The notes under the pieces: model-generated
Database searches by the model: none
Told to the model about the DNA's origin: nothing
Seen by the model: the letters and a program-made list of their open reading frames with translations, nothing else
IMG/VR virus record: IMGVR_UViG_3300034072_000926
Coordinates: 186,001 to 250,000 of that record
Reading direction: 5' to 3' (one strand)
DNA: 64,000 nt
Shown: positions 30,861 through 61,418 of the stretch, in pieces
Position numbering within the stretch: the stretch's first letter is position 1
Layout: the number at the start of each line of letters is the position of its first letter
Translations under genes and position numbers: made by a program

Positions 30861-31115
30861 TTAGGCTTCAACGGCAGCAGCGAGCTGCTCGTTCTTGAAG
30901 GTCTTGGCTGCTTCCAGTTCCAACATGAGGTTGTTGGCCTTGCGACGCAGCAGATGCAGGCTATACTGCTCGCTCGAAACGTCCTTGCCCTTCATGGAAG
31001 CCATAACCTTCTTGAGGTCACGGATCTCCTGCGAGATCTGTGCATACTTGAAGCGCCATGCTGCACGGTAGACCAGGTAGGTTTCACGCGAATTGAAATC
31101 GAAAGTATAAGTCAT
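30861..31115 (-). CDS. Hypothetical helical protein
   Basis: GGAGGAG RBS, ATG at 31115; 'FNSRETYLVYRAAWRFKY...EIR'. Confidence 0.65.
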   Translation of the reverse strand: MTYTFDFNSRETYLVYRAAWRFKYAQISQEIRDLKKVMASMKGKDVSSEQYSLHLLRRKANNLMLELEAAKTFKNEQLAAAVEA

Positions 31116-31417
31116 TAGATTGCTCCTCCAAAAGTCAGTTTGAAAAGTAGGGCGGTGTCGTGGTTCTCGAAATACCATTTGTCACCACCGCCGTTGTGCC
31201 AAAAGCTACCATTGTGTTCATTACACCAGGGCATCATCTCAGAGGTTTTCTCTTTGACAGTTACCGTGGTGCATTCAGGCCAAGCTTCACGAAGCCTCTT
31301 GCTCCAATGCTTGTCTCGGGTTGAGACTCCTACTGGTTGGCAAAACTTCATACCGCATTCACGCCATGCCTTGATGTAGGCTTGGGTTGCGATAGTTTGA
31401 GCTGTTTTGAAATCCAT
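31115..31417 (-). CDS. Small 'FKL-tail' family protein
   Basis: C-terminal FENHDTALLFKLTFGG. Confidence 0.6.
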   Translation of the reverse strand: MDFKTAQTIATQAYIKAWRECGMKFCQPVGVSTRDKHWSKRLREAWPECTTVTVKEKTSEMMPWCNEHNGSFWHNGGGDKWYFENHDTALLFKLTFGGAI

Positions 31418-31420
31418 CGG

Positions 31421-31879
31421 TCACTCCACTGCGCTGAAACGCTTGGTGATCGCATGTGCCTGTTCGCGGGTGCAAGGGCCAATACCCAGGGCAGTCACGA
31501 TGGGCGAACCATCGAACTCGGTGCCGGGGATAATGTGGTTCTTGTCCACGATGAGGGAAGTGATCAGACCAGCAGCCTGGGCCTCTTCGTAAGCGCGCTG
31601 GATAGCGGCTTCGTTCTTGGCCTTGAGGATGACTTGGGTGCCGATGAAGTCCGGGCCCTGGTAAACACGCAGGAGTTCCGGTTCGCGCCGACTAGCGAGA
31701 AGCACACAATTCTTGGCCGCATGACAAGCCTGGCTTGCCAGCTTACCGGGCTTCATAGCCAGGTCGCCTCGAATGATGCTATAGATGCGAAGCTTTTCAG
31801 AGGCAGCTTCGAAGGCCTCGTCGTCATTATCCGCTTCGTAGCGAGCAATGGCTTCCTACAAGAACGAGTTCGTCAGCAT
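31421..31879 (-). CDS. pth2: Peptidyl-tRNA hydrolase type 2 (Pth2) with in-frame amber codon at codon 8 (31856-31858)
   Basis: 'IIRGDLAMKPGKLASQACHAA...VILKA...LIVD...TALGIGP' is Pth2. The ORF-track start (31756) truncates the conserved first strand. The in-frame ATG at 31879 follows the RBS AGAAAGGA and reads MLTNSFL*EAIARYE. Confidence 0.8.
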
Positions 31880-31919
31880 TTGCAGTCCTTTCTATTTGCG
31901 TCCAACATCGGACGTCCTC

Positions 31920-31947
31920 AACATAAGACACTTTTAGGATGTGTCAA
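31920..31947 (-). promoter_or_regulatory. Sigma70-like promoter of pth2
   Basis: TTGACA-N16-TATGTT. Confidence 0.55.
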
Positions 31948-31961
31948 CACTTAAATTGAAA

Positions 31962-32300
31962 TTATTTTGCCTCGGTTTCTTTCAAGGCTTCAATCTCTTC
32001 CCTGGTGTAATATTTCGTCGTATCAGGGCTAGTACAACCATGTGGACTATGGTATTTCATTTTCCACATCAATGCACCTTTCTCAGTTGGAAAGATAACC
32101 TCCAATGCAGGACCTTCCCAACGTCCGCCCCAAGCCTCAATATCAGCAAGGACTTCTGGCTTTAGATCAGGTGTAAACTTATCAGCCCAGTGACCTATAA
32201 TCAAACCTTCTTTCCAGAGGTTGATCGTGCCATACCCGAAATGATGTTCCGTTGGTTCATCATCGTTTATGCCATTCCAGGTATAATAGGTCATCGCCAC
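31962..32300 (-). CDS. Small 'FKL-tail' family protein (divergent)
   Basis: FPTEKGALMWKMKY. Confidence 0.55.
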   Translation of the reverse strand: MAMTYYTWNGINDDEPTEHHFGYGTINLWKEGLIIGHWADKFTPDLKPEVLADIEAWGGRWEGPALEVIFPTEKGALMWKMKYHSPHGCTSPDTTKYYTREEIEALKETEAK

Positions 32301-32623
32301 CTCAGCTTAAACATCATCGCATCGCGCGAATGGCTAAACACCACACCGACACTATACGAGCAACCTGTCTCCCAGCCAACTTTCTTCCACTCGCCATGCT
32401 TGACATTTTCCTTACACCATTCCTCAACAGGAATGAATGTGGACCAGGAAAAGCCTAGCATCTTGACCAGATACCAGTTCGGGAACTTCTTATGGATTGA
32501 TTCGACGAAATCTCCGTCTTCCCATTCGTCTTCTTCGAATAGGTTTGAGGTCTCCACGTCTTCGGAAATTTGGCCATCGTGGTAACCGAGATCGTCCCAC
32601 AGCCAGGTAACATCATTATTCAT
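32291..32623 (-). CDS. Small 'FKL-tail' family protein
   Basis: VEEWCKEN...FSHSRDAMMFKLRWR; GGAGGA RBS. Confidence 0.65.
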   Translation of the reverse strand: MNNDVTWLWDDLGYHDGQISEDVETSNLFEEDEWEDGDFVESIHKKFPNWYLVKMLGFSWSTFIPVEEWCKENVKHGEWKKVGWETGCSYSVGVVFSHSRDAMMFKLRWR

Positions 32624-34342: not shown

Positions 34343-34852
34343 TTACTGGTTGAGAATGAAGATGAAGGAAACAACTGCCATCATAACACCGCCCCAGAAG
34401 AATGGGCTCTTCAGCAGCGCGGGCTTGATATCTGGGATAGCGATGGGTTCTGGTTCCGGCCTCGGTTCCCGAACATTTCTGAGCCCGAGGAAGGCTTGCC
34501 ATTCCCATTCCGAAGAAGGCCGGTCATTGTTGTTCGTACTAGCCGCACCAGCATAGCCGATATACAGGCCTTCGCTGGCCGCCCATGTCCTCAGCTCTTC
34601 CCATACGGGCTGATATGCAGATTTCTCATCTTCCATATCCCATCGAGAACCATAGCAGGGCATTTCGAAGAGATGCCGGATAGCCTTTGGGGCAGTCACT
34701 GGCGCATATTCACTGCCGTGCTTTACTGCCTCTTGTAGGGCTTCGAGCAAGGTGGACTTTACGAAGAACCGAAGGAGGTCTGCATTCTCCTTCAGTTCAT
34801 TATGGATGGCTTCGCGCTTGGTCTTGCGAAGATCATCTGCGAGCGTTGCCAT
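34343..34852 (-). CDS. Hypothetical protein with C-terminal transmembrane anchor
   Basis: Hydrophobic C-terminal 'PFFWGGVMMAVVSFIFIL'. Confidence 0.6.
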   Translation of the reverse strand: MATLADDLRKTKREAIHNELKENADLLRFFVKSTLLEALQEAVKHGSEYAPVTAPKAIRHLFEMPCYGSRWDMEDEKSAYQPVWEELRTWAASEGLYIGYAGAASTNNNDRPSSEWEWQAFLGLRNVREPRPEPEPIAIPDIKPALLKSPFFWGGVMMAVVSFIFILNQ

Positions 34853-36171
34853 TAGTCTTCAATCCTCAAGTGATCTGCCTTGTATTCAGCTTCGAAGACA
34901 TCCTTATAGGTTTTGATGATTAGAATCAATACCGCAGGATACAGGAAGGTGGACAGAAGGACATTGCCGACCACAATAGCCTCGAAGAGTTCCAGGTATT
35001 CAAAGTCCCTGGGAATCATATGCAACATGAGCAGCGAGAACGCACCCTTCACACCGGCAGCAGTCAATACCTTCCACCAATGCAGCGGGATGGTCACAAC
35101 TTTATCAGTCCGCTGACTCATCCAAGCAAACCCGCCCAACATGACCATTCGAATGATCGTCGAACCTACGAATACTGCCATGATCTCGCCCCAATACTTC
35201 ACAAGCAACTGGAGATTGATCAGATTAGCCATCGTAATGAACAAGACCGTCGAGGCAATGATTGCAATGAACTGGATGTTACCGATGACGACTTGATAGG
35301 CATAGGAATCCTTGATCATGTTGTCGAAACGAGGAATGATCTTCCCAATGGTCCGACCACGTTCGCCAGTGTCCTCAACAGCATTCTCGAGTTCACTCGA
35401 TAGTCGCTTGGTGATGATATTGTTGGCGAAGAGGATCGCAACGATAACAGCAAAGATGCCAGAAGCATGATAGTGTTCAGCAATCGCGAACGCGCCTAGG
35501 GCCATGAGCAGGACAATCATCGTCTCAGTCATTGCATCGTGGATATAACGCAGAGCAATAAGACCCACGTAACCAACGACCAGACCAATGCCAAGTGCGC
35601 CGACGACCATCTTGACCGCGTAGAGGGTGGGGTTATCCGCTACATGCTCGGGGCCATGACCCATATAGACTAGCGCGATACTGAATACAATCAGGGCACT
35701 TGCGTCGTTGAACAAACTCTCACCCTCTGCGAGGACTTTGAGATTGTGAGGCAAATGCGACCGACCGAACACCGCAGAGACCGAAACTGGATCCGTTGCA
35801 AGGATCATACAGAACAATGCTGCGACCGCCGGGGCCGTCAGATGGTAGTCAGGTAGAATGTGTCGATTGACCATGATTGCAAGGCCGACCGAAAGGACGA
35901 TCATAATGCCTGCAATGTAGAACAAGCTTAGGGCATTGCGCTTGAGCTCATCCCAGCGGAGCATCATAGCGTCAACGCATATCAGGATGGGAAGCATGAG
36001 GAAGACCAGATGGTCAAATGTTTGATCACTAATCTCGATGGGACGATGCCCGGAAAGTGAAACCAGAACCACCGAGGCGATAATTGTTATCGGGGTGGGA
36101 ACGCCTAGCTTTTGCTGGACGAAAAGAGCCGTAGCGGCTATGAGCACAACAAAGATAGCTAGTTCTAGCAT
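34852..36171 (-). CDS. CPA1-family Na+(K+)/H+ antiporter (NhaP-like)
   Basis: Many hydrophobic helices; ATDPVSV and EGESLFNDA motifs. Confidence 0.9.
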   Translation of the reverse strand: MLELAIFVVLIAATALFVQQKLGVPTPITIIASVVLVSLSGHRPIEISDQTFDHLVFLMLPILICVDAMMLRWDELKRNALSLFYIAGIMIVLSVGLAIMVNRHILPDYHLTAPAVAALFCMILATDPVSVSAVFGRSHLPHNLKVLAEGESLFNDASALIVFSIALVYMGHGPEHVADNPTLYAVKMVVGALGIGLVVGYVGLIALRYIHDAMTETMIVLLMALGAFAIAEHYHASGIFAVIVAILFANNIITKRLSSELENAVEDTGERGRTIGKIIPRFDNMIKDSYAYQVVIGNIQFIAIIASTVLFITMANLINLQLLVKYWGEIMAVFVGSTIIRMVMLGGFAWMSQRTDKVVTIPLHWWKVLTAAGVKGAFSLLMLHMIPRDFEYLELFEAIVVGNVLLSTFLYPAVLILIIKTYKDVFEAEYKADHLRIED

Positions 36172-36209
36172 CTACTTTCCTATTCTGTTTGACCTCATAA
36201 AATGTTGAG

Positions 36210-36282
36210 CGCGCCTAGCGAGGCTCGAACTCGCGACCCGCGGATTTAGAGTCCGCTGCTCTACCAACTGAGCTATAAGCGC
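36210..36282 (-). tRNA. Amber-suppressor tRNA (anticodon CUA), tRNA-Gly-like body, no encoded CCA
   Basis: Minus strand GCGCTTA-TA-GCTC-AGTTGGTA-GAGC-A-GCGGA-CTCTAAA-TCCGC-GGGTC-GCGAG-TTCGAGC-CTCGC-TAGGCGC-G gives a complete cloverleaf with a 7-nt loop CT-CTA-AA. Confidence 0.92.
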
Positions 36283-36293: not shown

Positions 36294-36752
36294 TTAGGAC
36301 TTATTCTCCAGCCTGTCAAGACGTTCCATGATTTCTCGGAGAAGTTCTACCTGCTCCCTGGATTGATTCTTGAGAAGTTCCTGTTCCTCGTGCGTGAATG
36401 CATCGCTGTTGACGATCAGATGTGCGGCAAACTTAGCCGTGATGATCGGTGCGATGATAAAGGTGCAAACGTGCATGAACACGCCTGCAAGAAACTTGCT
36501 CCAGGGATGCGTGGGAAACATATCCCCGTATCCAACAGTGGTCGCTGTCACGGTCGCCCACCAAAAGCTGTCAGTGATGTCCTTGCCTTCGATGAAGCTG
36601 AACATAAGAGCAGCTATGGTCATGATCAGGCCATATGCAATTGCAAGGCTTATGACCCGATTGAACAGTTTCTGCATCAGCGTCAATTCTTGACCAGCCC
36701 CGGCTGCGGCGGTCCACAAATCACTACCGGCTTGTTCGATCTTTCTACGCAT
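36294..36752 (-). CDS. Two-TM potassium channel (KcsA-like)
   Basis: Selectivity filter TATTVGYGD flanked by two TM helices. Confidence 0.9.
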   Translation of the reverse strand: MRRKIEQAGSDLWTAAAGAGQELTLMQKLFNRVISLAIAYGLIMTIAALMFSFIEGKDITDSFWWATVTATTVGYGDMFPTHPWSKFLAGVFMHVCTFIIAPIITAKFAAHLIVNSDAFTHEEQELLKNQSREQVELLREIMERLDRLENKS

Positions 36753-38764: not shown

Positions 38765-38792
38765 AGCTTACAGGAAAAAGGTTAGCTGTCAA
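38765..38792 (-). promoter_or_regulatory. Sigma70-like promoter, leaderless cysS transcript
   Basis: TTGACA-N16-TAAGCT, with the ATG 6 nt downstream. Confidence 0.5.
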
Positions 38793-39193
38793 CCAAAAGT
38801 CAATTTGAACAGAATAGCCATCCTGCGATCAGAGAACCTAGCAGTGAGTCGAAACTCAACTTTGCTATTGCGACCTGAAATTGCTTCTTCAAATGGATCA
38901 CCGGCATCAACTAGGAAACTGAAATGAACATTGCCTTGTGTTATGGTTTCCTTTGCCCATTCCATGATATTGATACCATTGAGATGGAAGTCAGGGCGAC
39001 ACAGAACATTGCGATGAGCCTGGTAGTCTGCCAGAGTTCCATATTCAACAGTTAGGAATGGAACCTTAACAGTTGCTCGATAGGGTTCGAGACGCCTCCA
39101 CCACTTATCGCGAAAGGCATAGACGTAATATCGCTCGTCACGATAGGGAATATCACCTCCACCGCGATGAAATGTTTTCTGCGTCCAGCTCAT
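38789..39193 (-). CDS. Small 'FKL-tail' family protein
   Basis: FSDRRMAILFKLTFG. Confidence 0.6.
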   Translation of the reverse strand: MSWTQKTFHRGGGDIPYRDERYYVYAFRDKWWRRLEPYRATVKVPFLTVEYGTLADYQAHRNVLCRPDFHLNGINIMEWAKETITQGNVHFSFLVDAGDPFEEAISGRNSKVEFRLTARFSDRRMAILFKLTFG

Positions 39194-39531
39194 CGTCCAC
39201 CCATCTGAAGTTTGAACATCAATGCACTATTGGGATCAGTGAATCGAACCCGAATAATGCAAGGATCTTCTTTAAGAAAAGAATAGCTTTTTGCGGGATA
39301 GACATCAAAGATGTATGATCCCTTTGCATTGTCTTTCAGCCACTCCTCTAGATCTTCGCCATTTGCATTGAAGAAGCTGCACTCGTTATTCCGACGTCTT
39401 GGACAGAGAAAGGTCTTGATTGTTCCTCCACGAACAATCGCTTCGGTCCAGGGCTTGAAGACTTTATGGAGACTGAACAAACGCAGATGCATCTTTGTGA
39501 TATGAACGTCTGTGTAGCGTCTAAATATCAT
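39190..39531 (-). CDS. Small 'FKL-tail' family protein
   Basis: LEEWLKDN...FTDPNSALMFKLQMGG. Confidence 0.6.
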   Translation of the reverse strand: MIFRRYTDVHITKMHLRLFSLHKVFKPWTEAIVRGGTIKTFLCPRRRNNECSFFNANGEDLEEWLKDNAKGSYIFDVYPAKSYSFLKEDPCIIRVRFTDPNSALMFKLQMGGR

Positions 39532-40889: not shown

Positions 40890-41207
40890 TTAAGTATTAC
40901 TACGGAAATATGACAAAAACAAAGGTATCTGTGGTTTGTCGTGGAGGAAGTAAGGACTCAGCTTGAAATAGAGAGCTTCTCGCACATCGATGAACAAAAT
41001 TCGGATATATGTATGATTTGTATGGTCTTCTTGCTGCACCTCCTCAAGGTGCTCAAGGGTCCACTCGCTCTTACAGTTCTTCAAGAGCCAGATCTCTATG
41101 AAACTATAGAGTAAATCTACTTTTAACTTTGTTAGGTGCGAAACTTCGAGAACGACGGTAAAGCCGTTTTCCAAGATCTGAGGATGAGTTGTCCGCAGTA
41201 GGTGCAT
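40890..41207 (-). CDS. Small 'FKL-tail' family protein
   Basis: IEIWLLKN...FIDVREALYFKLS. The ATG at 41207 sits 4 nt after TAAATA. Confidence 0.5.
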   Translation of the reverse strand: MHLLRTTHPQILENGFTVVLEVSHLTKLKVDLLYSFIEIWLLKNCKSEWTLEHLEEVQQEDHTNHTYIRILFIDVREALYFKLSPYFLHDKPQIPLFLSYFRSNT

Positions 41208-41265
41208 ACTGTATTTATGAACTATAACACAGTCCACAAATACAGTCATGCTTCGAAGGAGGAAG

Positions 41266-43244: not shown

Positions 43245-43559
43245 TTAAGAAATTTGCCACGCCTGGTGACCACCGCGTAGCTTGAACATCAACGCGTCAT
43301 TCTTGTCCTGAAACCGAACAACCATCGTATGATCGTTGGTCTTGCGGGACTTTGGATGTTGGTAGCAGTAAGAAGCCCATTGACCCGGATTGTTCTCACG
43401 GAGCCAGTCCTGGACTTTCTTTATTGATTCCCAGCTATCGGGAATATTGAACTGAACGCGAGTCCAGTTGAGGTTCATTGGACCCTGACTATGTTGTCTA
43501 AATAGCTCAGTTGTCGGGACTTCAAAGTTTGTGAATGTAATCTGTTCGGGCTGTTCCAT
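43245..43559 (-). CDS. Small 'FKL-tail' family protein
   Basis: VQDWLREN...FQDKNDALMFKLRGG. Confidence 0.6.
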   Translation of the reverse strand: MEQPEQITFTNFEVPTTELFRQHSQGPMNLNWTRVQFNIPDSWESIKKVQDWLRENNPGQWASYCYQHPKSRKTNDHTMVVRFQDKNDALMFKLRGGHQAWQIS

Positions 43560-45107: not shown

Positions 45108-45119
45108 CCTATTTGGCAT

Positions 45120-54006: not shown

Positions 54007-54015
54007 ATTATCCTC

Positions 54016-54546: not shown

Positions 54547-54812
54547 ATATTCCTCCACCCGACAATCTCAACTTCTTCACGGCTATGAATGAAATGAACT
54601 TTGAGATAATCTGGCAATTGTTGGTATTGAGCAGGTGAAATATAAGAACCAGTTGGCCTACGAATTCCATAAACCATGATAGGATAAGCAGACAAGGCTA
54701 TCATAATCTTGATCGAATCAGCTGTCGAAATAGTATAGAGACTTTCAAGAGGACGATAGATATCTAGTTCCATCGTCTTAGGCGCTTTGGCCTTCCTAAA
54801 CCAACCGAACAT
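54543..54812 (-). CDS. Hypothetical protein
   Basis: Likely start MFGWFR at 54812. Confidence 0.5.
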   Translation of the reverse strand: MFGWFRKAKAPKTMELDIYRPLESLYTISTADSIKIMIALSAYPIMVYGIRRPTGSYISPAQYQQLPDYLKVHFIHSREEVEIVGWRNI

Positions 54813-54813
54813 C

Positions 54814-55743
54814 TTACTTTCCAATAATATTGCCAAAGCACCAAGTGTGAACACGTAGGGCTACGGAATAACCACGCTCCACTGCCTGTTCAGCAATAAT
54901 AGCCTGATGGCTTTCCTGCATCTCACGGTCAGCACCAACAGGCATAATCCAAACGTCCCAATCAATACCGGCTTTGCGATATGCTTCAGTTGCCCTCGCA
55001 ACTTCATCCCAAGAACGATCAGTGCCGTTGCTGACGAACTTCAACTGACCATGATCGCTGATTGCCTTATAGTGGGCAAGAACGTCTGGCTTGATCGCGT
55101 TGTCCCAAAGTTCGCCCGAGAGATAGAGCTTAGGGCTTACAGACCAGAACAGTTCTGTATCACAAGCCACTGCATCATGATCTGCATCGAGCAGCTTCGT
55201 TGGACGCTCCCTGAAATCTCCATTGAAGAAGTTCTCAAAAGCAGGGCGAGGCTTCTGCGTTCCATTTGTTTCAATGGTAACGAAACGAGGCATGTTGTAA
55301 CGCTTGCGGAAGTTCTGCATCACATCAACAACTGCGGTCTGGCTCATCATTGGTTCGCCGCCGGTGAAAGCCATGTGGTGCCACTGCTTCGAGGTAGGAT
55401 GTTCAAACTTACCACCAGGTAGAGTTGCTTCAATCTTGTCACAGATTTCAGCAGCCGTGTTCTGATGAGCAAGGTGTGAGAACCTCTTGGACCATGAGTA
55501 GCTCGAATCACAGCCCCTGTGGAAAACTGGAAGAGCTTCCATAGACTTGTATTCCGAAGGATCAATCTTCAGATAGTCCAGGTCGTAGGTCTCTGGCTTA
55601 TCGGGCTGTTCCTGACCGAAGCCCGCACATTCGAAGTTGCAACCCCAAACTCGCAACCATGCTGTTGGACGACCGGTGTAAGCACCTTCACCCTGGAATG
55701 TTTGTCCGAAGATCTCGGAGTATCGATATTTCTTTTCAGTCAT
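54814..55743 (-). CDS. queE: 7-carboxy-7-deazaguanine synthase (radical SAM)
   Basis: SEIF.TFQGEG..TG.P..WLR..GCNFEC...GCDS, FTGGEP, IETNGT, SVSPK, R.H. Confidence 0.85.
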   Translation of the reverse strand: MTEKKYRYSEIFGQTFQGEGAYTGRPTAWLRVWGCNFECAGFGQEQPDKPETYDLDYLKIDPSEYKSMEALPVFHRGCDSSYSWSKRFSHLAHQNTAAEICDKIEATLPGGKFEHPTSKQWHHMAFTGGEPMMSQTAVVDVMQNFRKRYNMPRFVTIETNGTQKPRPAFENFFNGDFRERPTKLLDADHDAVACDTELFWSVSPKLYLSGELWDNAIKPDVLAHYKAISDHGQLKFVSNGTDRSWDEVARATEAYRKAGIDWDVWIMPVGADREMQESHQAIIAEQAVERGYSVALRVHTWCFGNIIGK

Positions 55744-56243
55744 GCTTTCCACCATTCCTCGTAGGGAAAGATCACCCAGGAATCATCTTCGCTGCGATTG
55801 ATCTCTCGACCTGCATAATTGGGCTCGAAGAGATCCTGGCCAATGTTGTTCCACAATACTGCAGACTTGAGCTCGTTGGAGCAATCATATTCGTCCGCAT
55901 TATCTAGGTGGCACAGGATTTCATCCAGCTGGTCCACTACATTACGGAGAGTATCCCCGCCATCGCAAATATCATCTACGAGTAGGACCTTTTTCTTTGC
56001 CTTGATCTTCAGCGCAACATCGTTGATTTCAGATGCCTGACTGACCTTGCGATCACGAAGAGAATAGTTGATCACTTCGAGGGGCTTGCCCAGGTAGTGG
56101 CTCAACATTGTGGCGGGCACCAATCCCCCGCGAGCAATACCGACGATGATATCTGGCATGAAAGCATCCAGGGTCATCTGGCGCAGGATCTCTTGAAGGT
56201 CACCGCGCAATTGGGTATTGGTGTAAATGATCTTGTTGGGCAT
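55740..56243 (-). CDS. Type I phosphoribosyltransferase (xanthine/guanine PRT-like)
   Basis: GIARGG, PRPP loop VLLVDDICDGGDT, WVIFPYE. Confidence 0.85.
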   Translation of the reverse strand: MPNKIIYTNTQLRGDLQEILRQMTLDAFMPDIIVGIARGGLVPATMLSHYLGKPLEVINYSLRDRKVSQASEINDVALKIKAKKKVLLVDDICDGGDTLRNVVDQLDEILCHLDNADEYDCSNELKSAVLWNNIGQDLFEPNYAGREINRSEDDSWVIFPYEEWWKA

Positions 56244-56545
56244 TAGCACCACCTCATCTTGAAGAGCATTGCTTCCCTGATATCTAGTTCGACCAACACA
56301 TATTCGTAAATAGTGATTGCTCGATGATCAGGGAAGCAAGTCCAAATCCAATCCATAGCCTCCGAAGCCTCCATCACAAGAAAGAAGTTTCGGACGACTT
56401 GCATTGCTTCACGCTGTCCTACTTTTGGTTTGCCCCAAGTCATGTTCTTGACCATCAGGTCAACAGCATGGTTGGATTCATCCTCAGTTAGACCTAAGAC
56501 CATCATCTCAGGAATCTTAGGATCGTAGATAGCGTGAGGCAACAC
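56243..56545 (-). CDS. Small 'FKL-tail' family protein
   Basis: LDIREAMLFKMRWC. Confidence 0.55.
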   Translation of the reverse strand: MLPHAIYDPKIPEMMVLGLTEDESNHAVDLMVKNMTWGKPKVGQREAMQVVRNFFLVMEASEAMDWIWTCFPDHRAITIYEYVLVELDIREAMLFKMRWC

Positions 56546-56548
56546 GGA

Positions 56549-57310
56549 TTAATTGTGGCCCTTCATGCTCAGCATGATCTTGTAGAACTCGTCCTTCAGG
56601 TGAGCATCTTCACGGAACTTGCCACGCATAATTGCAGTGGTCATATCCGATTCGTGCTCGCGAACACCGCGATGCGTCATGCAGTGGTGTTCGGCCTTCA
56701 GGACAACCGCGACGTTTTCAGTCTCGGCGTATTCGACCAGAGCATCAGCAATCTGAGTGGTCATCTCTTCCTGAATCTGAGGACGTTCGCTGATCCAGTG
56801 GACCAGACGATTGAACTTCGACAGGCCAATGACTTTATCCTCAGGGAAGATACCAACCCAGCACTTGCCAACAATATTCTGGAAGTGATGAGCACAAGTG
56901 GAACGGATCGAGATCGGACCTGCGGTGTAGAGATCCTGATAGCCGATGTTGGGGAACGAAGTGATCTTCGGAGCAGCCGAATAACGACCGCCGTAGGTTT
57001 CGTTCACATACATCTTGGCTACGCGACGAGCCGTGCCATTGGTGTTGTGGTCATGATCAGTGTCGATGACCAGGCTGCGGAGAACCGCTTCCATCTTCTC
57101 AGTGACTTCATCGACTAGAAGAGCACGCTCTTCATCGCTGATGAACTTTGAGATGTTGTCGTTGCAATGGAACTGTTGACCAGCTTCAATCAAACGGGCG
57201 CGGATTTGTTCAGATACCGGAATTGGTGTGTCGGTAGCTGTAACCTCTTGCCCGAAAGTGCATTCACAATCGTTAGAGCCGCAGCTCTCGGTAAGTTTGG
57301 TGTCGGACAT
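56549..57310 (-). CDS. folE: GTP cyclohydrolase I
   Basis: TARRVAKMY, STCAHH, GLSKFNR, RPQIQE, HHCM..RGV. Confidence 0.95.
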   Translation of the reverse strand: MSDTKLTESCGSNDCECTFGQEVTATDTPIPVSEQIRARLIEAGQQFHCNDNISKFISDEERALLVDEVTEKMEAVLRSLVIDTDHDHNTNGTARRVAKMYVNETYGGRYSAAPKITSFPNIGYQDLYTAGPISIRSTCAHHFQNIVGKCWVGIFPEDKVIGLSKFNRLVHWISERPQIQEEMTTQIADALVEYAETENVAVVLKAEHHCMTHRGVREHESDMTTAIMRGKFREDAHLKDEFYKIMLSMKGHN

Positions 57311-57338
57311 TATCTGTCTCTCCTTATAGTTGTTCTAT

Positions 57339-57367
57339 ACCATACTTAGAAACTGGCATAGTGTCAA
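57339..57367 (-). promoter_or_regulatory. Sigma70-like promoter of folE
   Basis: TTGACA-N17-TATGGT. Confidence 0.5.
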
Positions 57368-57378
57368 TTTATTAGCTG

Positions 57379-57819
57379 TTAATTGCTCAGCTTTAGCATG
57401 AGCGCACACTTATTTAGAAAAGGTGCGATATCGGCTTCATTCTCGAAGAAAATCTCAAAGAAACCGCTTCCTGTGCCCTTAGAGATCATCGAACCAGTTG
57501 TTGAATCCCAGTCCTTGTCCCTAGAGTAGCTCTTGTCCATCGTCCAGAATCCGGTGCAGTTTTCATCACAATAGCGATGAATATCCTCCATAACGTCATC
57601 AATATCAGCATGGTCATATGAACCAAAGTCAGACACGTTGCTGGTATTAAACTTGATCAGAACCTTATTGCGAAGGAACTTCTGAGCAAGCTCTTGGAAC
57701 TCAGGCTTTACAGCCCAAGTTCTCCAGTTGCGGGGACGTCCATCCTCTTGAGGAACTTCCATCATCCGTGCTTCGATGAAACGCTGGCGACGAATTACTC
57801 CAACAGTTAGGTCGGTCAT
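57379..57819 (-). CDS. Hypothetical protein (divergent FKL-tail-like)
   Basis: YCDENCTGFW...FFENEAD...ALMLKL. Confidence 0.55.
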   Translation of the reverse strand: MTDLTVGVIRRQRFIEARMMEVPQEDGRPRNWRTWAVKPEFQELAQKFLRNKVLIKFNTSNVSDFGSYDHADIDDVMEDIHRYCDENCTGFWTMDKSYSRDKDWDSTTGSMISKGTGSGFFEIFFENEADIAPFLNKCALMLKLSN

Positions 57820-58889
57820 GCGAGCAGCCTATCTAGCATCGGGTTACAGGAGAGATACTTATCAAGCAGCTTCTGCTTTTGCTTGGCCATCTTATCCTGG
57901 AACAGGTGGTAATTCTTAATCACATGCGTGAGAGCCTTGACCATCGGATAACGATGAGCCGTATAGTAGTCCCAGTCTGCTGTCCAATCACTCGGATAGA
58001 GCAAATCGTATTCATACATCTCAGTGTAGGATAGACGGTTAGGCAAGAACGGAATCGCTCCGACCAATACACCTTCCATTGCCGAGATACCTAGGGTTTC
58101 CTGCAAATTAGCGGAGAAGACAACCTTGGCTTCTCCCAACAATTTGTGGTATTCATCCTTTGTGAGCTTCTTGTCCTGACAGACCACAAACTCAACATTC
58201 GGCATTTCCTGTGCGAGGTCACGGAAGATCTCCACTTGCTTCTCAGGAGCAATTCGATGCGGGAACAAGACGAGGTCACGCTTAGGCATACCCTCAAATG
58301 CCCTCAGGCTGTCAACGAGTGCAGAGTGGGGCTGTCCGCTTATCACGCAACGTTCCTCGGCTGTTCCTCTTGCAGGGAGTAATGTGTTGAGAAACAACTC
58401 CTTGTGGAACTCGGTGGCAAAATAGTTGAAGTGACTAGCGTAGAACAGTCCGCGCTCAGTGTTGTAGGTCCAACGCTTGTCCCGAATCAAACGACCGAGG
58501 AAGTCCTGAGGATCATAAGAACCTGCATGCCACATGCTATGGATCTCAACGGGAATCTGCATCAGTTCACTCATATAGCGAACCTGTGTGATACCAGTGT
58601 GCCACGCATCGGTGAACAGAACCTTGTCACCTGCCTTCACGACACCCTTCTGGAAATACTCGACTAGTCGATTGACCTGAGAGTTCTTCCAGATATTGGT
58701 TGCAAAGAAATCCAAGAAGGCACCTTCGGTTGGTGCGCTGCTCGTCTGTTCACCCGCGATATTGTAGACAGTGACATCCTTGCCACGTTCCTGAGCCGTC
58801 TGCTCAATTAGCTTTGGGATACCATCGAACCACTGACCAGTGTATCGGGTTTCCAATGGCTCTAGGGCCATGATAAAAATGTTTGTCAT
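57816..58889 (-). CDS. GT-B fold glycosyltransferase (GT4-like)
   Basis: 'HRIAPEKQ' and the Ex7E motif 'QETLGISAMEG', then 'PNRLSYTEM'. Confidence 0.8.
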   Translation of the reverse strand: MTNIFIMALEPLETRYTGQWFDGIPKLIEQTAQERGKDVTVYNIAGEQTSSAPTEGAFLDFFATNIWKNSQVNRLVEYFQKGVVKAGDKVLFTDAWHTGITQVRYMSELMQIPVEIHSMWHAGSYDPQDFLGRLIRDKRWTYNTERGLFYASHFNYFATEFHKELFLNTLLPARGTAEERCVISGQPHSALVDSLRAFEGMPKRDLVLFPHRIAPEKQVEIFRDLAQEMPNVEFVVCQDKKLTKDEYHKLLGEAKVVFSANLQETLGISAMEGVLVGAIPFLPNRLSYTEMYEYDLLYPSDWTADWDYYTAHRYPMVKALTHVIKNYHLFQDKMAKQKQKLLDKYLSCNPMLDRLLA

Positions 58890-58890
58890 A

Positions 58891-59202
58891 TCAGCACCAA
58901 ATTAGTTTGAACATCAGAGCGTCGTCAAGTTTCTCAAAATACCAGACAACCTCATATTCTCGGTAATAATTGTCAACGTCCCAATCGTATCCACCACCGG
59001 CCATAAAATCAATTATATCCGATTGGTCAGGATCTACGAACTTGACTATCCAAGCCCAACGACCTCTGTCTTCTTCGAAGAGCCACTTCATAGATTCAAC
59101 ATCTGATGACTCGAGTGCCTCTTTGTTGTGATTCATAAGAGCCCGACGTAGATCGTCGTCCATATCATGAAGGGTGTAGGCAACTTGATGATCCCAGAAC
59201 AT
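58891..59202 (-). CDS. Small 'FKL-tail' family protein
   Basis: FEKLDDALMFKLIWC. Confidence 0.6.
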   Translation of the reverse strand: MFWDHQVAYTLHDMDDDLRRALMNHNKEALESSDVESMKWLFEEDRGRWAWIVKFVDPDQSDIIDFMAGGGYDWDVDNYYREYEVVWYFEKLDDALMFKLIWC

Positions 59203-59203
59203 G

Positions 59204-59452
59204 TCACATCCACGTTAGCTTGAACAACATTGCGGAATTATCATCCCAAATGTCGATATAGAATATCAGATAGGTATGTAGGCCCTCTCCTAGATCACGC
59301 TGCTCATGCAAAGCATAATCGTCATACTTGATATTGCGCTGATCCAGCCATTCCTTAACCACTGGATTGAGTCTTAGATCAAAATCAGCCGGGTCATCAG
59401 GATGGGCAAAGTTATGCCAATCGTAGAGAGGTTTACGAAGCTGGAAAATCAC
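59204..59452 (-). CDS. Small 'FKL-tail' family protein
   Basis: VKEWLDQ...DDNSAMLFKLTWM. Confidence 0.6.
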   Translation of the reverse strand: MIFQLRKPLYDWHNFAHPDDPADFDLRLNPVVKEWLDQRNIKYDDYALHEQRDLGEGLHTYLIFYIDIWDDNSAMLFKLTWM

Positions 59453-59820
59453 TTCTTGACCGGATACTCAGCAAAGCTTCCGTTCTCACCGTCTTCGCTC
59501 ACCTCAATAGTGATGTGACGATTAGGGAACTTTGTGGTGATCTCAGCATAGAGTGCATCACTGATCATTTCACAGGACTTATAATCCAGTTCGAGGGTGC
59601 CGTTGCCGTAGAGGCTTTCGAGCCAACGCTTGAACTGAATGAACTCCAGGTCGCGATCATCATGGAACACTTCAATCCAGACCTTGAACTTGAACATATG
59701 ACGATGGTCATAGCCAAGGAACTTCACGTCTGCGAGGTTCGGGTCTGTTAGTGCGGCGGGGTATTTGTGGACACCTTCTTTTGCGAACGTGACCCAAATC
59801 ATCTTAAAGTCTTCTGTCAT
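59449..59820 (-). CDS. QueD/6-pyruvoyl-tetrahydropterin synthase-like T-fold protein
   Basis: H...HRH metal-binding motif, 'SCEM', 'VSEDGENG'; adjacent to folE and queE. Confidence 0.65.
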   Translation of the reverse strand: MTEDFKMIWVTFAKEGVHKYPAALTDPNLADVKFLGYDHRHMFKFKVWIEVFHDDRDLEFIQFKRWLESLYGNGTLELDYKSCEMISDALYAEITTKFPNRHITIEVSEDGENGSFAEYPVKK

Positions 59821-59857
59821 GCTCTCTTTATAGCAAAACAGGTGACAGCGAGCAATA

Positions 59858-60190
59858 TTATCTGGAGAGCTTATTGATCAAGGCAGCGACTAGAAGTCTG
59901 CGATACACTGAGAATCGCTTCAAAGTGGGATTGAGGAAGATACGGATACCCCAATGATAATGGCTGACAATGGGTGCAGCCTTTTGATTCTTCCGCTTTC
60001 TCACACTTTGTCTGTCAACTGGATTATACTCAGACTTTATGACTGGCTCATGAACAATCATGAAGGCGCCGGGAATGAAGCGGTGCATTATAGAGTAGAT
60101 GCGCTTATACTCTTCAAAAGTGGTGTGCATCTTGAGAAATAGGTGATCAGGATGTCTGCCACCCGAATAGTTGGTAATATCTTGAATCAC
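59858..60190 (-). CDS. Hypothetical basic protein
   Basis: Coupled ORF. Confidence 0.5.
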   Translation of the reverse strand: MIQDITNYSGGRHPDHLFLKMHTTFEEYKRIYSIMHRFIPGAFMIVHEPVIKSEYNPVDRQSVRKRKNQKAAPIVSHYHWGIRIFLNPTLKRFSVYRRLLVAALINKLSR

Positions 60191-60396
60191 ATCCAGGTCA
60201 ACTTGAAAAACATTGCATCCTTGGGATTAGGAATCTGAATATACGCTCTTTGATCCATGAAACCCAGACTTAGGTGATATTTGATGCCATTACGATACAA
60301 CCAAGAGTAGAACTGGCCACTCAAGGTTCTTACCTTAGATTCCTTGACCACGATATAGGTATAGTGATCATCTTCTCGCAATTCAAAGGTCGTCAT
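60187..60396 (-). CDS. Small 'FKL-tail' family protein
   Basis: PNPKDAMFFKLTWM. Confidence 0.6.
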   Translation of the reverse strand: MTTFELREDDHYTYIVVKESKVRTLSGQFYSWLYRNGIKYHLSLGFMDQRAYIQIPNPKDAMFFKLTWM

Positions 60397-60629
60397 AGCC
60401 AGGTCATCTTGAACAGTATGGCGTGATTATCATCGGGAAAGTTTAGCTCAACGAGACGGTATGATACCACTCGTCCAGAGAACAGAATGCCTAGGTCGTT
60501 ACACCATTCGGCAACTTCTTCATCTAAGACAGGAAACCAGCTTCCTTCACCTTCTCGATCAATTGTGCATCGAGTCACGAAGCCAGCGTCTTTGTTCTCT
60601 TTGCAATGAGTTTTGACATAGAGCTTCAT
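60393..60629 (-). CDS. Small 'FKL-tail' family protein
   Basis: VAEWCND...FPDDNHAILFKMTWL. Confidence 0.6.
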   Translation of the reverse strand: MKLYVKTHCKENKDAGFVTRCTIDREGEGSWFPVLDEEVAEWCNDLGILFSGRVVSYRLVELNFPDDNHAILFKMTWL

Positions 60630-60976
60630 GCGAGACCCTTAAAACCGAGACGATCGTTAGCGACGCGACGATCAAAATGGCCAAGGAAGATATTCTTGGA
60701 AGGTATATTCCAGGCTAGAACGAAATGTCGAGCAGTCTTGAGATCTTTGAATTTCAAGTAGCTTTCTTTGCGACCCTTGGCTCTGTTCTGATACTTGACC
60801 TCGACAACGTGTTGAGTCTTGGCTACGCCATTGGCTTCTAGCCAGCGTTCCAGGTCGGGATTCATCTCACGTTTCCAACCACTGCCATAGATCCTCATGT
60901 TGTTAGTGGCCTCGGATCCTTGAACCCAACGCCAATGAAACCGACGATCAAGTATGATTGAAATCTCTATATCCAT
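60626..60976 (-). CDS. Small 'FKL-tail' family protein (divergent)
   Basis: LERWLEAN...FKDLKTARHFVLAW. Confidence 0.55.
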   Translation of the reverse strand: MDIEISIILDRRFHWRWVQGSEATNNMRIYGSGWKREMNPDLERWLEANGVAKTQHVVEVKYQNRAKGRKESYLKFKDLKTARHFVLAWNIPSKNIFLGHFDRRVANDRLGFKGLA

Positions 60977-61215
60977 GTCAACTTGAATAGCATCGCGTCT
61001 TTCAAGCTGTCAAAATAGATTGCAGAAACCTTGCTAAATGGAGCCTCGCCATACCAATATTCGAGGTTCTGATCTTTCAGCCATTCCTCAATATCCTCAT
61101 TGAGGCGATAGGTCTTACCGTAATAGGGATCAGCAGAACTCTTCCATCGACTGTCGAGGTGACGATGGCGACCGTCCAACATAACGAGATGTTTGTTTGT
61201 GAACATTATAGCCAC
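60967..61215 (-). CDS. Small 'FKL-tail' family protein
   Basis: IEEWLKDQ...FDSLKDAMLFKLTWI. Confidence 0.6.
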   Translation of the reverse strand: MAIMFTNKHLVMLDGRHRHLDSRWKSSADPYYGKTYRLNEDIEEWLKDQNLEYWYGEAPFSKVSAIYFDSLKDAMLFKLTWI

Positions 61216-61418
61216 CTTAGTTTGAACATAGCGGCCTTCTTACGATCCGTTATGTGTATGATTGCTTTGAAATTGGATAAGAGACTAAAGACGTATTCAG
61301 TCTTCGTGACTACGAGCCAGAGTTTAACATCACGCCGCAAATGTAAAGAAGTCTGCCATTCATTGACTTGCTGAGACTCGATAAACTCTGATCCAAGTTC
61401 GAACAGAGTATCAAGCAT
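61206..61418 (-). CDS. Small 'FKL-tail' family protein
   Basis: Likely start MLDTLF at 61418; TDRKKAAMFKLRWL. Confidence 0.55.
   Translation of the reverse strand: MLDTLFELGSEFIESQQVNEWQTSLHLRRDVKLWLVVTKTEYVFSLLSNFKAIIHITDRKKAAMFKLRWL

What the first reader, a model, noticed from the sequence alone, without database searches (positions are those of the whole stretch)
31115..61418. About 16 dispersed small paralogues sharing a C-terminal F-x4-A-x-x-F-K-L-x-W motif
Seen in ORFs ending at 31115, 31962, 32291, 38789, 39190, 40890, 43245, 56243, 57379 (divergent), 58891, 59204, 60187, 60393, 60626, 60967 and 61206. Examples: DAMMFKLRW, DALMFKLIW, SAMLFKLTW, DAMFFKLTW, DAMLFKLTW. Most also have an upstream helix like V/I-x-E-W-L/C-x-E/D-N. 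N-termini are unrelated. The genes occur in translationally coupled runs (five in tandem at 60187-61418) and are interleaved among metabolic genes. Inference: an expanded family with a constant docking module and a variable recognition part, for example adaptors for one phage or host hub (ClpP, the AAA ATPase, RNA polymerase) or an anti-defence repertoire. The conserved 3' DNA could also aid shuffling by recombination.
Basis: partly seen in the sequence, partly recalled or inferred. Interest (0 to 1): 0.7.

Follow-up and report, generated by a model that had tools for sequence, protein, structure and literature searches.

The report
Ninety-copy protein family, jumbo phage
A 465-kb bacteriophage genome gives about one gene in nine (83-90 genes, 14-15 of them in this window) to a single undescribed family of tiny proteins that share a 60-residue fold ending in D-A-M-L-F-K-L-T-W; this is more than twice the largest such expansion I found reported for a phage, and its function is unknown.

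Summary

The window lies in a complete 465,259-bp T4-like jumbo phage from a metagenome. The whole genome holds 83-90 members, about 6% of its DNA, mostly in arrays of up to 32 genes. Relatives carry 82, 94 and about 55 copies; Atu_ph07 has 4-5; T4, phage G and three other large phages have none.

The motif is the last helix of an autonomous domain of about 60 residues, predicted as strand-strand-helix-strand-strand-helix (pLDDT 82). The conserved residues are mostly hydrophobic. Loops, N-terminal extensions and charge (pI 4-11) vary freely.

No Pfam, PHROGs, NCBIfam or PADLOC model matches. No fold match rises above background; the nearest are DCoH-like and ACT-like folds at Z 6-7.

Conservation is at the protein level, because synonymous codons are randomised. 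This argues against the DNA-recombination idea.

The genes sit in translationally coupled operons. Six of 31 operon heads carry sigma-70-type promoters and none carries the late-type CTAAATA motif.

Best inference, unproven: a repertoire of diversified small binding proteins made early or mid-infection for host takeover or counter-defence. A single-hub adaptor role is untested.

The parts
31115..31417 (-). Family member, 100 aa, ends ...DTALLFKLTFGGAI
   Evidence: Profile E 5.7e-14. Orthologue in Phosso at 41% identity over 95 aa.
32291..32623 (-). Family member, 110 aa, ends ...RDAMMFKLRWR
   Evidence: Profile E 1.2e-12. Orthologue in Phosso at 52% identity over 77 aa.
38789..39193 (-). Family member, 134 aa, ends ...RMAILFKLTFG. 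It overlaps the next member by 4 nt.
   Evidence: Profile E 5e-10. 38% identical to its counterpart in relative L046; no counterpart in L038.
39190..39531 (-). Family member, 113 aa, ends ...NSALMFKLQMGGR
   Evidence: Profile E 1.4e-12. 36% and 45% identical to its positional counterparts in L038 and L046.
40890..41249 (-). Family member, 119 aa, next to RNA ligase. The motif REALYFKL is internal, followed by a 22-residue tail.
   Evidence: Profile E 1.6e-8. 65% and 71% identical to orthologues in L038 and L046. Atu_ph07 homologues gp255 and gp258 lie near its RNA ligase gp261.
43245..43559 (-). Family member, 104 aa, immediately upstream of phage ClpP (42560-43177). It is the best-scoring member in the window.
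   Evidence: Profile E 3.8e-16. Same position next to ClpP in L038, L046, a 407-kb JGI contig and seven IMG/VR contigs, at 58-62% identity.
56243..56545 (-). Family member, 100 aa, ends ...REAMLFKMRWC, downstream of GTP cyclohydrolase I (56549-57310)
   Evidence: Profile E 6.6e-10. Neighbour identified by Pfam.
57379..57819 (-). Marginal, divergent member, 146 aa, ends ...CALMLKLSN
   Evidence: Profile E 0.005, covering helix 1 and the strands only.
58891..59202 (-). Family member, 103 aa, ends ...DDALMFKLIWC
   Evidence: Profile E 9.9e-9. Contigs 99-100% identical are present in wastewater RNA libraries.
59204..59452 (-). Family member, 82 aa, ends ...NSAMLFKLTWM
   Evidence: Profile E 2.3e-13.
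60187..60396 (-). Minimal family member, 69 aa, essentially the bare domain; the subject of the second structure model
   Evidence: Profile E 3.6e-12. AlphaFold2 pLDDT 81.6, elements E3-8 E13-18 H27-35 E41-44 E51-55 H58-68.
60393..60629 (-). Family member, 78 aa, with a 4-nt ATGA overlap with the next gene
   Evidence: Profile E 6.8e-11; overlap seen.
60626..60976 (-). Family member, 116 aa, with a degenerate motif (TARHFVLAW) and a 27-residue C-terminal tail
   Evidence: Profile E 3e-8 to 2e-9, domain at residues 33-89.
60967..61215 (-). Family member, 82 aa; the subject of the first structure model
   Evidence: Profile E 9.6e-15. AlphaFold2 pLDDT 76.4 with the same order of elements.
61206..61472 (-). 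Family member, up to 88 aa (start codon uncertain), ends ...KKAAMFKLRWL
   Evidence: Profile E 1e-7.
57339..57367 (-). Sigma-70-like promoter candidate (TTGACA, 17 nt, TATGGT) heading the operon 53152-57310 that contains member 56243-56545. A CTAAATA motif also lies just upstream, at 57417.
   Evidence: Consensus match only, with no expression data.

Best explanation
SHOWN. The ORFs encode a lineage-specific multigene family of small proteins (median 97 aa), nearly all soluble. They are built on one autonomous domain of about 60 residues, predicted as strand-strand-helix-strand-strand-helix. Together with helix 1 (L..E[VI].W[LC].EN) and the strand [FVI]-x-F it forms the conserved, mostly hydrophobic part of the protein. 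Loops, N-terminal extensions and net charge vary freely, and no column looks catalytic. The family has 83-90 copies here and 82-94 in complete close relatives. It grew by old local duplications into arrays. Individual copies persist as positional orthologues that evolve faster than neighbouring enzymes.

SHOWN BY MOTIFS ONLY. The genes sit in translationally coupled operons. Some operon heads carry host sigma-70-type promoters and none carries the late-type CTAAATA motif.

INFERRED. The proteins are made early or in mid-infection. They act as a repertoire of diversified small binding proteins on one stable scaffold. Each paralogue would have its own host or phage target, in host takeover or counter-defence, rather than all serving one hub.
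For: - Copy number and lineage: searches give G000 83-90, IMG/VR relatives 82 and 94, and Phosso 53-55. Atu_ph07 has 4-5. Five other large phages have none.
- Wider spread: 2131 representative clusters at E<=1e-3. All 150 listed are 53-245 aa, and 15 of those 150 have two domains. Arrays also occur in unrelated-looking metagenome contigs: 9 members in 4.5 kb of L012, which has 37% GC.
- Fold: two AlphaFold2 models, pLDDT 76 and 82, show the same order of elements.
- Conservation: the strongly conserved columns are W, L/C, F, F, A, M/L, L, F, L and W, plus E, N, D and K that can be read as helix caps or a salt bridge. No conserved His, Cys or Ser column exists.
- Variable surfaces: pI runs from 4.1 to 10.9 and net charge from -14 to +12. 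Two of 90 members have a membrane-like stretch.
- Protein-level selection: all synonymous codons are used at invariant residues.
- Old local duplication: the best paralogue lies within 3 kb for 21% of members against 7.7% expected, yet paralogues are only 25-40% identical.
- Retained but fast orthologues: 62/58, 65/71, 36/45 and -/38% identity against 52-92% for adjacent enzymes.
- Timing: the sigma-70-like pattern heads 6 of 31 family operons against 27 of 378 other operons, with chance about 1.4% per 100 nt. CTAAATA heads 0 of 31 against 16 of 378, and it precedes candidate sheath-sized and portal-sized genes.
- Not virion parts: Atu_ph07 homologues gp255 and gp258 are absent from that phage's virion mass-spectrometry table.
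- No hit in any curated family library.
Against: - No binding partner, phenotype or expression time course exists for any member; the functional part is inference from anatomy and analogy.
- Promoter evidence is consensus matching. One CTAAATA lies at the head of the plus-strand half of the largest array (312672) and another just upstream of the operon holding member 56243-56545, so late transcription of some copies is not excluded.
- Small non-family genes in this genome turn over as fast or faster: 39 of 390 have a reciprocal best hit in Phosso against 20 of 90 family genes. Fast evolution is therefore not specific to the family.
- The conserved, nearly invariant Lys and the very hydrophobic last helix could equally mark a common interface.
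- RNA-library contigs show presence, not transcription.
Confidence: 0.4

Rival explanations
1. Common-hub adaptors or modulators. All members would dock, through the invariant A-x-x-F-K-L-x-W helix, onto one phage or host machine, such as the phage Clp protease or unfoldase, the MoxR-like AAA ATPase, or RNA polymerase. Their variable parts would select substrates or conditions.
For: - The last helix is hydrophobic around most of its circumference and holds a nearly invariant Lys (275 of 295), more than a simple packing helix needs.
- It always ends the protein within 1-4 residues.
- The best-conserved member is a fixed neighbour of phage ClpP and of the AAA/VWA pair in four or five relatives.
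- These phages encode several Clp proteins (PMC11242549).
Against: - Conservation is not confined to the helix; it covers the whole domain.
- Residues after the Trp vary, unlike known C-terminal degrons.
- ClpP adjacency concerns one of about 90 copies, in genomes that share synteny over the whole segment.
- No complex was tested.
Confidence: 0.17
2. Nucleic-acid-binding proteins: specific transcription or translation regulators, or RNA or DNA chaperones. This is what was proposed for the roughly 35-copy zinc-ribbon expansion of Bacillus phage G.
For: - The two-layer alpha/beta sandwich has an open sheet face.
- The family is rich in aromatic residues (Trp 3.7% against 1.6%), with frequent Tyr/Trp/Arg at the outward-facing strand position 50.
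- Structural neighbours include eIF1, KH, RRM and the GyrA tower domain at Z 5-6.
- The analogy comes from PMC7824862.
Against: - A third of the members are acidic (31 of 93 with pI below 6) and net charge goes down to -14.
- No conserved basic patch exists apart from the one Lys.
- All structural matches are within background (Z below 8).
Confidence: 0.12
3. Nearly neutral or selfish expansion. A small, robustly folding gene cassette is duplicated easily in the plastic regions of a very large genome and is mostly dispensable.
For: - Arrays lie in regions full of other small orphan ORFs.
- Presence/absence differs between relatives (38789-39193 has no counterpart in L038).
- Only about 20 of 90 copies have a recognisable partner in Phosso.
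Against: - Fold-core residues are maintained by selection across thousands of diverged copies with randomised synonymous sites.
- Reading frames are intact.
- Positional orthologues persist at 58-71% identity.
- Three complete or near-complete genomes keep 82-94 copies.
- There are no recent duplicates; the best paralogue identity is about 40%.
Confidence: 0.1
4. Capsid-associated or injected proteins, in the manner of T4 internal proteins, delivered with the DNA.
For: One member (G000 278473-279075, outside the window) is fused to a copy of the major capsid protein's N-terminal segment (Pfam Gp23 positions 4-62, E 1.6e-13). Relatives encode Gp23-N-like proteins next to ClpP.
Against: - This is one fusion among about 90 copies.
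- Atu_ph07 homologues were not detected in virions.
- No family operon head carries the late motif.
- No shared N-terminal targeting sequence is present.
Confidence: 0.05
5. Stand-alone small-molecule sensors of the ACT kind.
For: The best structural neighbours are ACT-like regulatory domains (aspartokinase Z 6.8, VC0802 Z 6.7, CASTOR2 Z 5.9). ESM Atlas neighbours carry ACT_7 or ACT_9.
Against: - The order of elements differs from ACT (strand-helix-strand-strand-helix-strand).
- The aspartokinase matches are non-contiguous, spread over about 150 residues.
- No Pfam ACT hit was found.
- Z values are within background.
- Ninety sensors without output domains are hard to rationalise.
Confidence: 0.04

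Closest known systems
Lineage-specific expansion of a zinc ribbon (about 35 copies) in Bacillus phage G (Iyer et al. 2021, PMC7824862)
   Same: One small domain is multiplied many times within one jumbo phage genome. Its function is unknown and was guessed from the fold. The authors called it 'unprecedented'.
   Different: - The fold is different: no conserved Cys or His here.
- Copy number is 2.4-2.7 times higher (83-94).
- It occurs in a different phage group, T4-like group 2.2 rather than phage G. The family is absent from phage G.
DCoH / pterin-4a-carbinolamine dehydratase fold (PDB 2ebb, 1uso, 3jst, 4low)
   Same: Same order of secondary-structure elements (two strands, helix, two strands, helix) in a two-layer sandwich. 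The match is contiguous over 64-65 of 69 residues at rmsd 2.4-2.8 and Z 5.5-5.9. From my own knowledge, DCoH and the carboxysomal acRAF are protein-binding adaptors.
   Different: - Sequence identity is 3-11%, and there is no Pfam hit.
- Z lies within the tool's stated background (below 8).
- No conserved His column is present; from my own knowledge the dehydratase site uses His residues.
ACT-like regulatory domains (aspartokinase 6mx1, VC0802 1zvp, CASTOR2 9kpb)
   Same: They have the highest structural scores (Z 5.9-6.8; Atlas TM 0.65-0.70) and the same two-layer arrangement.
   Different: Connectivity differs, the alignments are non-contiguous, no sequence-profile match exists, and no ligand motif was tested.
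Multigene families of large eukaryotic DNA viruses (African swine fever virus MGF110/360/505; poxvirus Bcl-2-like proteins). This is an analogy from my own knowledge, not a tested relationship.
   Same: Tens of highly diverged paralogues of one simple fold lie in arrays. They are retained across relatives with gains and losses and have no enzymatic motifs. In those viruses they antagonise host defences and set host range.
   Different: The hosts and folds are different, and no functional data exist here.
Small early 'host-takeover' and anti-defence genes of T4-like phages. This is an analogy from my own knowledge.
   Same: Short, translationally coupled genes sit behind host-type promoters among replication and nucleotide-metabolism genes, and they vary between relatives.
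   Different: In T4 these genes are mostly unrelated singletons; here about 90 share one fold. T4 itself has no member.

Membership tests
Any curated protein family (Pfam-A, PHROGs v4, NCBIfam 20, PADLOC-DB 2) | Profile match at or above the library's threshold | tested here: not met
   - Pfam: no hit below E 0.001 for 10 window members or 10 distant members.
- PHROGs: 0 of 10, then 2 stray weak hits among 59 members.
- NCBIfam: none that is meaningful.
- PADLOC: none.
DCoH/PCD-like (Pterin_4a) | Strand-strand-helix-strand-strand-helix two-layer fold | tested here: met
   The AlphaFold2 models show this order. The match to 2ebb, 1uso and 3jst is contiguous. This rests on prediction only.
DCoH/PCD-like (Pterin_4a) | Structural similarity clearly above background | tested here: inconclusive
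   Z 5.5-5.9. The tool states that Z below 8 may reflect only a common arrangement. Foldseek finds nothing better than E 0.04.
DCoH/PCD-like (Pterin_4a) | Sequence-profile match and conserved catalytic histidines | tested here: not met
   No Pfam hit. No conserved His column among the 67 profile positions.
ACT domain | Strand-helix-strand-strand-helix-strand connectivity and an ACT profile match | tested here: not met
   The predicted order of elements differs. Aspartokinase matches are spread over about 150 residues. No Pfam ACT hit.
Lineage-specific domain expansion in a jumbo phage (as the phage G zinc ribbon) | Tens of paralogues of one small domain in one phage genome, few or none in other phage groups | tested here: met
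   83-90 copies here; 82, 94 and 53-55 in relatives; 4-5 in Atu_ph07; 0 in five other large phages.
Lineage-specific domain expansion in a jumbo phage (as the phage G zinc ribbon) | Zinc-ribbon cysteine pairs | tested here: not met
   Cys is 1.2% of residues, the same as in the rest of the proteome, and there is no conserved Cys column.
C-terminal degron or docking peptide for Clp-type machines | Conserved extreme C-terminal residues | tested here: not met
   Tails after the Trp vary: GGE, GGK, GGR, G, L, V, S, A, C, I or longer.
C-terminal degron or docking peptide for Clp-type machines | Physical binding to ClpP, ClpX or an AAA ATPase | not tested
T4-type internal (capsid-packaged) proteins | Presence in virions and a shared N-terminal capsid-targeting sequence | tested here: not met
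   Atu_ph07 gp255 and gp258 are not in virion mass-spectrometry Table S5. N-termini are not conserved. This is indirect, from another phage and only two homologues.
Anti-defence proteins (anti-CRISPR, anti-restriction and the like) | Inhibition of a defined host defence system | not testable with these tools
   No library of anti-defence profiles was available, and the test needs bench assays.

The most novel reading that the evidence does not exclude
This clade of rhizobial and soil jumbo phages has evolved what may be the largest multigene family yet seen in a phage. It would be a natural binder library: 80-95 paralogues of one 60-residue scaffold. Each paralogue would be tuned to neutralise or redirect a different host protein or defence system, much as the multigene families of African swine fever virus or poxviruses do in eukaryotic hosts.
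Probability: 0.3. Interest if true: 0.85.

Novelty: new variant of a known kind. Interest (0 to 1): 0.66.

Why it matters
- Jumbo phages are mostly orphan genes. Here about 11% of the genes of a 465-kb phage collapse into one family, which gives a single handle on a large part of that unknown coding capacity.
- The expansion is more than twice the roughly 35-copy case that a survey of 224 jumbo phages called unprecedented (PMC7824862).
- It is shared by cultivable phages (Sinorhizobium phages Phosso and probably AP-J-162), so it can be studied at the bench.
- If the paralogues are target-specific binders, they would be a rich source of inhibitors of host processes and anti-phage defences in agriculturally important rhizobia.
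- They would also offer a compact natural scaffold for protein engineering.
- If they all serve one hub, they would reveal a new layer of regulation of phage-encoded proteolysis or chaperone systems.
- Either way the family deserves a profile in Pfam or PHROGs.

Tried and rejected
- Homodimer prediction for the 69-aa member, with alignment A2: no verdict (score 0.00, fold poorly modelled in that tool). This is not evidence either way.
- tblastn of single members against 50,697 phage records found nothing, even though Phosso and Atu_ph07 hold members. That is a sensitivity limit, not absence.
- The search for related loci with the family alignment failed because no stretch is conserved enough.
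- Fold searches gave nothing significant: Foldseek against PDB, BFVD and AFDB clusters with model 1 (best E 0.1), PDB with model 2 (best E 0.04, de novo designs), and the VIA wide search with model 1 (best Z 4.5).
- The profile against PDB sequences gave only chance RanBP2 hits at E about 1.
- Conserved DNA repeat or recombination substrate: rejected.
- Acidic/basic pairing of adjacent members, which would be a hint of heterodimers or toxin-antitoxin-like pairs: correlation 0.04, and opposite-sign pairs are not enriched.
- The generic promoter and terminator scan of 44-64 kb was not above shuffles. Only the operon-head analysis was informative.
- dN/dS was not attempted, because the available relatives are 36-71% identical and synonymous sites are saturated.
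- Copy counts in L038, L046 and L012 could not be made, because those records are not held.
- Literature: no description of this family was found. 'Paralog' has zero occurrences in the AP-J-162 and Atu_ph07 papers, and a search for 'Phosso' found no paper on the phage.
- Metatranscriptome contigs cover the array but cannot separate RNA from contaminating DNA.

Full report
WHERE THE WINDOW LIES

The window is bases 186,001-250,000 of a single 465,259-bp contig. It is an IMG/VR virus record that CheckV rates 100% complete, with 49% GC. It encodes a T4-type major capsid protein, aminoacyl-tRNA synthetases, RNA ligase, ClpP and a MoxR-like AAA/VWA pair.

Its nearest named relative is Sinorhizobium phage Phosso (469 kb). 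Similarity is patchy at 68-70% nucleotide identity. There are 210 reciprocal best hits with a median of 43% amino-acid identity. It therefore belongs with the Atu_ph07-like T4-related jumbo phages, group 2.2 of Iyer et al. (PMC7824862). Its 31-mers occur in soil and subsurface metagenomes, which are probably the source, and in several other runs.

Yes. A-x-x-[FLMW]-K-[LM] occurs 17 times in six frames against 3.8 in shuffles. Thirteen occurrences lie within 12 residues of a stop, against 1.9 expected. Fifteen are on the minus strand in real ORFs.

ORF 57379-57819 is marginal (E 0.005). ORF 31962-32300 is not a member (E 44).

Those E-values are partly circular, because the ORFs helped build the profile. 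Two results are independent of that. A model built mostly from other genomes' proteins (A2) finds 83 copies in this genome. A search of 1.84 billion representatives finds 2131 further clusters at E<=1e-3.

The 'upstream helix' is real: L..E[VI].W[LC].EN, with Trp in 271 of 295 aligned sequences. So is translational coupling: an ATGA overlap follows 32% of members against 10% of other ORFs.

SCALE

Genome-wide there are 90 non-overlapping ORFs at E<0.001, about 30.5 kb or 6.5% of the genome. That is roughly 11% of a crude set of 788 ORFs.

They form 24 arrays or singletons. The largest has 32 members in 12.7 kb, arranged as two convergent blocks (312,472-325,222). Another has 11 members at 50.8-55.3 kb. 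The window's own array has 7 members.

Copy numbers with model A2 at E<=1e-3:
- G000 (this genome): 83.
- IMG/VR relative of 436 kb, terminal repeats, 100% complete: 82.
- IMG/VR relative of 417 kb, 90% complete: 94.
- Incomplete relatives: 62, 62 and 19.
- Phosso: 53.
- Atu_ph07: 5.

T4, Bacillus phage G, Xanthomonas phage XbC2, Acidovorax phage ACP17 and a 379-kb Acinetobacter phage have none. Most long public contigs that carry members are 280-480 kb; a few are 70-140 kb, and one entry lists a 958-kb contig that was not examined.

A 35-kb scaffold with 37% GC shares almost nothing else with this genome, yet has 9 members in 4.5 kb. A 981-bp contig has 3 members among 4 genes. The family therefore reaches beyond the immediate relatives and is typically arrayed.

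WHAT THE PROTEINS ARE

Median length is 97 aa. The shortest members (62-80 aa) are little more than the conserved domain. Fifteen of the 150 best outside hits carry two domains.

Two AlphaFold2 models agree on the order strand-strand-helix-strand-strand-helix. One is of an 82-aa member (pLDDT 76) and one of a 69-aa member (pLDDT 82).

Over 295 sequences the informative columns fall into three elements:
- Helix 1: L, E, V/I, W, L/C, E, N.
- Strands 3 and 4: aromatic residues, with [FVI]-x-F.
- The turn and last helix: D/N, then D-A-M/L-L/M-F-K-L-T/R-W, often followed by G-G.

These are hydrophobic residues, or polar residues that can be read as helix caps or a helix-to-helix salt bridge. That reading is my inference, because I could not access the model coordinates to measure burial. 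There is no conserved His, Cys or Ser column, so an enzyme is unlikely.

Other properties:
- pI runs from 4.1 to 10.9 and net charge from -14 to +12.
- Only 2 of 90 members have a membrane-like stretch.
- Trp is enriched, 3.7% against 1.6%.

COMPARISON WITH KNOWN FAMILIES AND FOLDS

No Pfam, PHROGs, NCBIfam or PADLOC model matches. Public records call the proteins 'hypothetical'. ESM Atlas neighbours are unnamed viral clusters.

Foldseek finds nothing at E<0.01 in PDB, BFVD or AFDB clusters. The exhaustive aligner gives these best values:
- ACT-like regulatory domains: Z 5.9-6.8, but non-contiguous and with a different connectivity.
- DCoH/pterin dehydratase: Z 5.5-5.9, contiguous, with the same order of elements.

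All are below the tool's own background mark of about 8. I therefore treat the fold as a common two-layer alpha/beta sandwich with DCoH-like connectivity and claim no homology.

EVOLUTION

Conservation is at the protein level.
- The invariant Ala uses all four codons (24, 15, 11 and 9 times).
- The invariant Leu uses all six codons.
- The median longest exact match between two members' last 63 nt is 6 nt, and only 1.2% of pairs share 14 nt or more.

Paralogues are only 25-40% identical, and there are no recent duplicates. Even so, the best paralogue lies within 3 kb for 21% of members against 7.7% expected (p<0.001). That fits old local duplication.

In a 20-kb segment syntenic with two metagenomic relatives (468 and 481 kb), the identities are as follows:
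- ClpP, the VWA protein and the AAA ATPase: 83-92%.
- Other enzymes: 52-76%.
- The four family genes: 62/58%, 65/71%, 36/45% and absent/38%.

The copies are therefore kept in place under purifying selection but sit at the fast end, with some gain or loss. Other small orphan genes turn over as fast or faster, so this is not unique to the family.

EXPRESSION CLUES

The most enriched intergenic words contain CTAAATA, which resembles the T4-type late promoter (my knowledge). The motif lies 3-120 nt upstream of 30 genes, many of them large. Examples are 1086-aa and 580-aa ORFs whose sizes match the sheath and portal of AP-J-162 (1092 and 574 aa). None of the 30 is a family gene.

When the genome is split into co-directional runs, 0 of 31 family-containing runs are headed by CTAAATA within 100 nt, against 16 of 378 other runs. 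A TTGAC-N17-19-TAnnnT pattern heads 6 of 31 family runs against 27 of 378 others. Chance is about 1.4% per 100 nt.

Caveats:
- These are consensus matches only.
- One CTAAATA sits at the head of the plus-strand half of the largest array.
- Another lies just upstream of the operon holding 56243-56545, within the wider 120-nt window.

Two further points bear on expression and location:
- Atu_ph07 homologues gp255 and gp258 lie near RNA ligase, as in the window. They are not among the virion proteins found by mass spectrometry.
- Four wastewater metatranscriptome runs hold 150-340-nt contigs 99-100% identical to the window's array. DNA carry-over cannot be excluded.

INTERPRETATION

Shown: a very large, lineage-restricted family of small non-enzymatic proteins with one predicted fold. 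The sequence is conserved at mostly hydrophobic positions and varies elsewhere. The genes are arrayed and translationally coupled among non-structural genes.

Inferred, at about 0.4: they are early or middle proteins that serve as a repertoire of diversified binders for host takeover or counter-defence. This follows from the scaffold-plus-variable-surface pattern, the retention of individual orthologues and the absence of catalytic residues. It also rests on analogy with multigene families of large eukaryotic DNA viruses (my knowledge).

In its favour are the unusually hydrophobic last helix with an invariant Lys, and the fixed ClpP neighbour. It was not tested.

Other rivals and their main weaknesses:
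- Nucleic-acid binding (about 0.12) is weakened by the many acidic members.
- Neutral expansion (about 0.1) is weakened by maintained cores, intact frames and stable copy numbers.
- Capsid delivery (about 0.05) rests on one fusion to a capsid-protein N-terminal segment.
- An ACT-like ligand sensor (about 0.04) rests on background-level fold matches.

NOVELTY

I found no description of the family in curated libraries or in the papers on Atu_ph07, AP-J-162 or jumbo phage comparative genomics. That survey called a roughly 35-copy zinc-ribbon expansion in phage G 'unprecedented'; this one is 2.4-2.7 times larger. The kind of thing, a lineage-specific expansion of a small domain in a jumbo phage, is known. 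The domain, its scale and its clade are new.

Noticed in passing
window 36209-36282 (-): A tRNA with anticodon CTA (ARAGORN labels it tRNA-Pyl), that is, an amber-suppressor-type tRNA, lies between a Na+/H+ exchanger homologue and an ion-channel-like gene. TAG ends about 15% of crude ORFs genome-wide, so whether TAG is read through late in infection is open. Atu_ph07 is reported to carry a TCA suppressor tRNA.
   Followed up: no
window 46961-47272 (-): A 103-aa protein with no Pfam hit is 96-97% identical in two relatives whose neighbouring enzymes are 50-92% identical. It is the most conserved gene in the 20-kb syntenic segment, and its function is unknown.
   Followed up: partly
G000 278473-279075 (+), outside the window (locus L005:1473-2075): A 200-aa protein joins a family domain (residues about 21-92) to a copy of the major capsid protein's N-terminal segment (Pfam Gp23 positions 4-62, E 1.6e-13) and a Pro/Gln-rich tail. 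Relatives L038 and L046 encode 205-211-aa Gp23-N-like proteins right after ClpP, a gene this genome lacks at that position.
   Followed up: partly
window 34852-36171 (-) and 36294-36752 (-): The phage encodes a Na+/H+ exchanger homologue (Pfam E 4e-26). Next to it is a 152-aa protein whose orthologues in relatives hit Ion_trans_2. Membrane ion transporters are unusual cargo for a phage.
   Followed up: no
window 43765-46383 (-), promoter-like site 45107-45080 (-): A MoxR-like AAA ATPase and a DUF2201 metallopeptidase/VWA protein form a pair that is 83-92% conserved among relatives. A perfect 12-of-12 sigma-70 consensus with an extended -10 TG sits just upstream of the VWA gene. Iyer et al. noted this chaperone pair in group 2.2 jumbo phages.
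   Followed up: no
G000 genome-wide; for example window 57417 (-): CTAAATA is the most enriched intergenic word family (up to 14-fold). It precedes 30 genes, including sheath-sized and portal-sized ORFs, so it is probably the late promoter of this phage group.
   Followed up: partly
window 54814-57310 (-): GTP cyclohydrolase I (E 5e-47) and a radical-SAM (QueE-like) gene, with a glycosylase further on, suggest a 7-deazaguanine DNA-modification pathway, as annotated in Phosso.
   Followed up: no
window 57000-62000: Near-identical 31-mers of this stretch occur in DNA runs labelled as single organisms (shares 0.78, 0.74 and 0.32), in an indoor metagenome (0.65) and in wastewater metatranscriptomes. 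This phage or very close strains are therefore widespread and may accompany cultured organisms.
   Followed up: no
family genes genome-wide, for example G000 322584-322877: About a quarter of members end in W-G-G-x-stop, and the stop usually overlaps the next start (ATGA). The Gly codons (GGN GGN) then lie a few bases upstream of that start and may double as its ribosome-binding site.
   Followed up: partly
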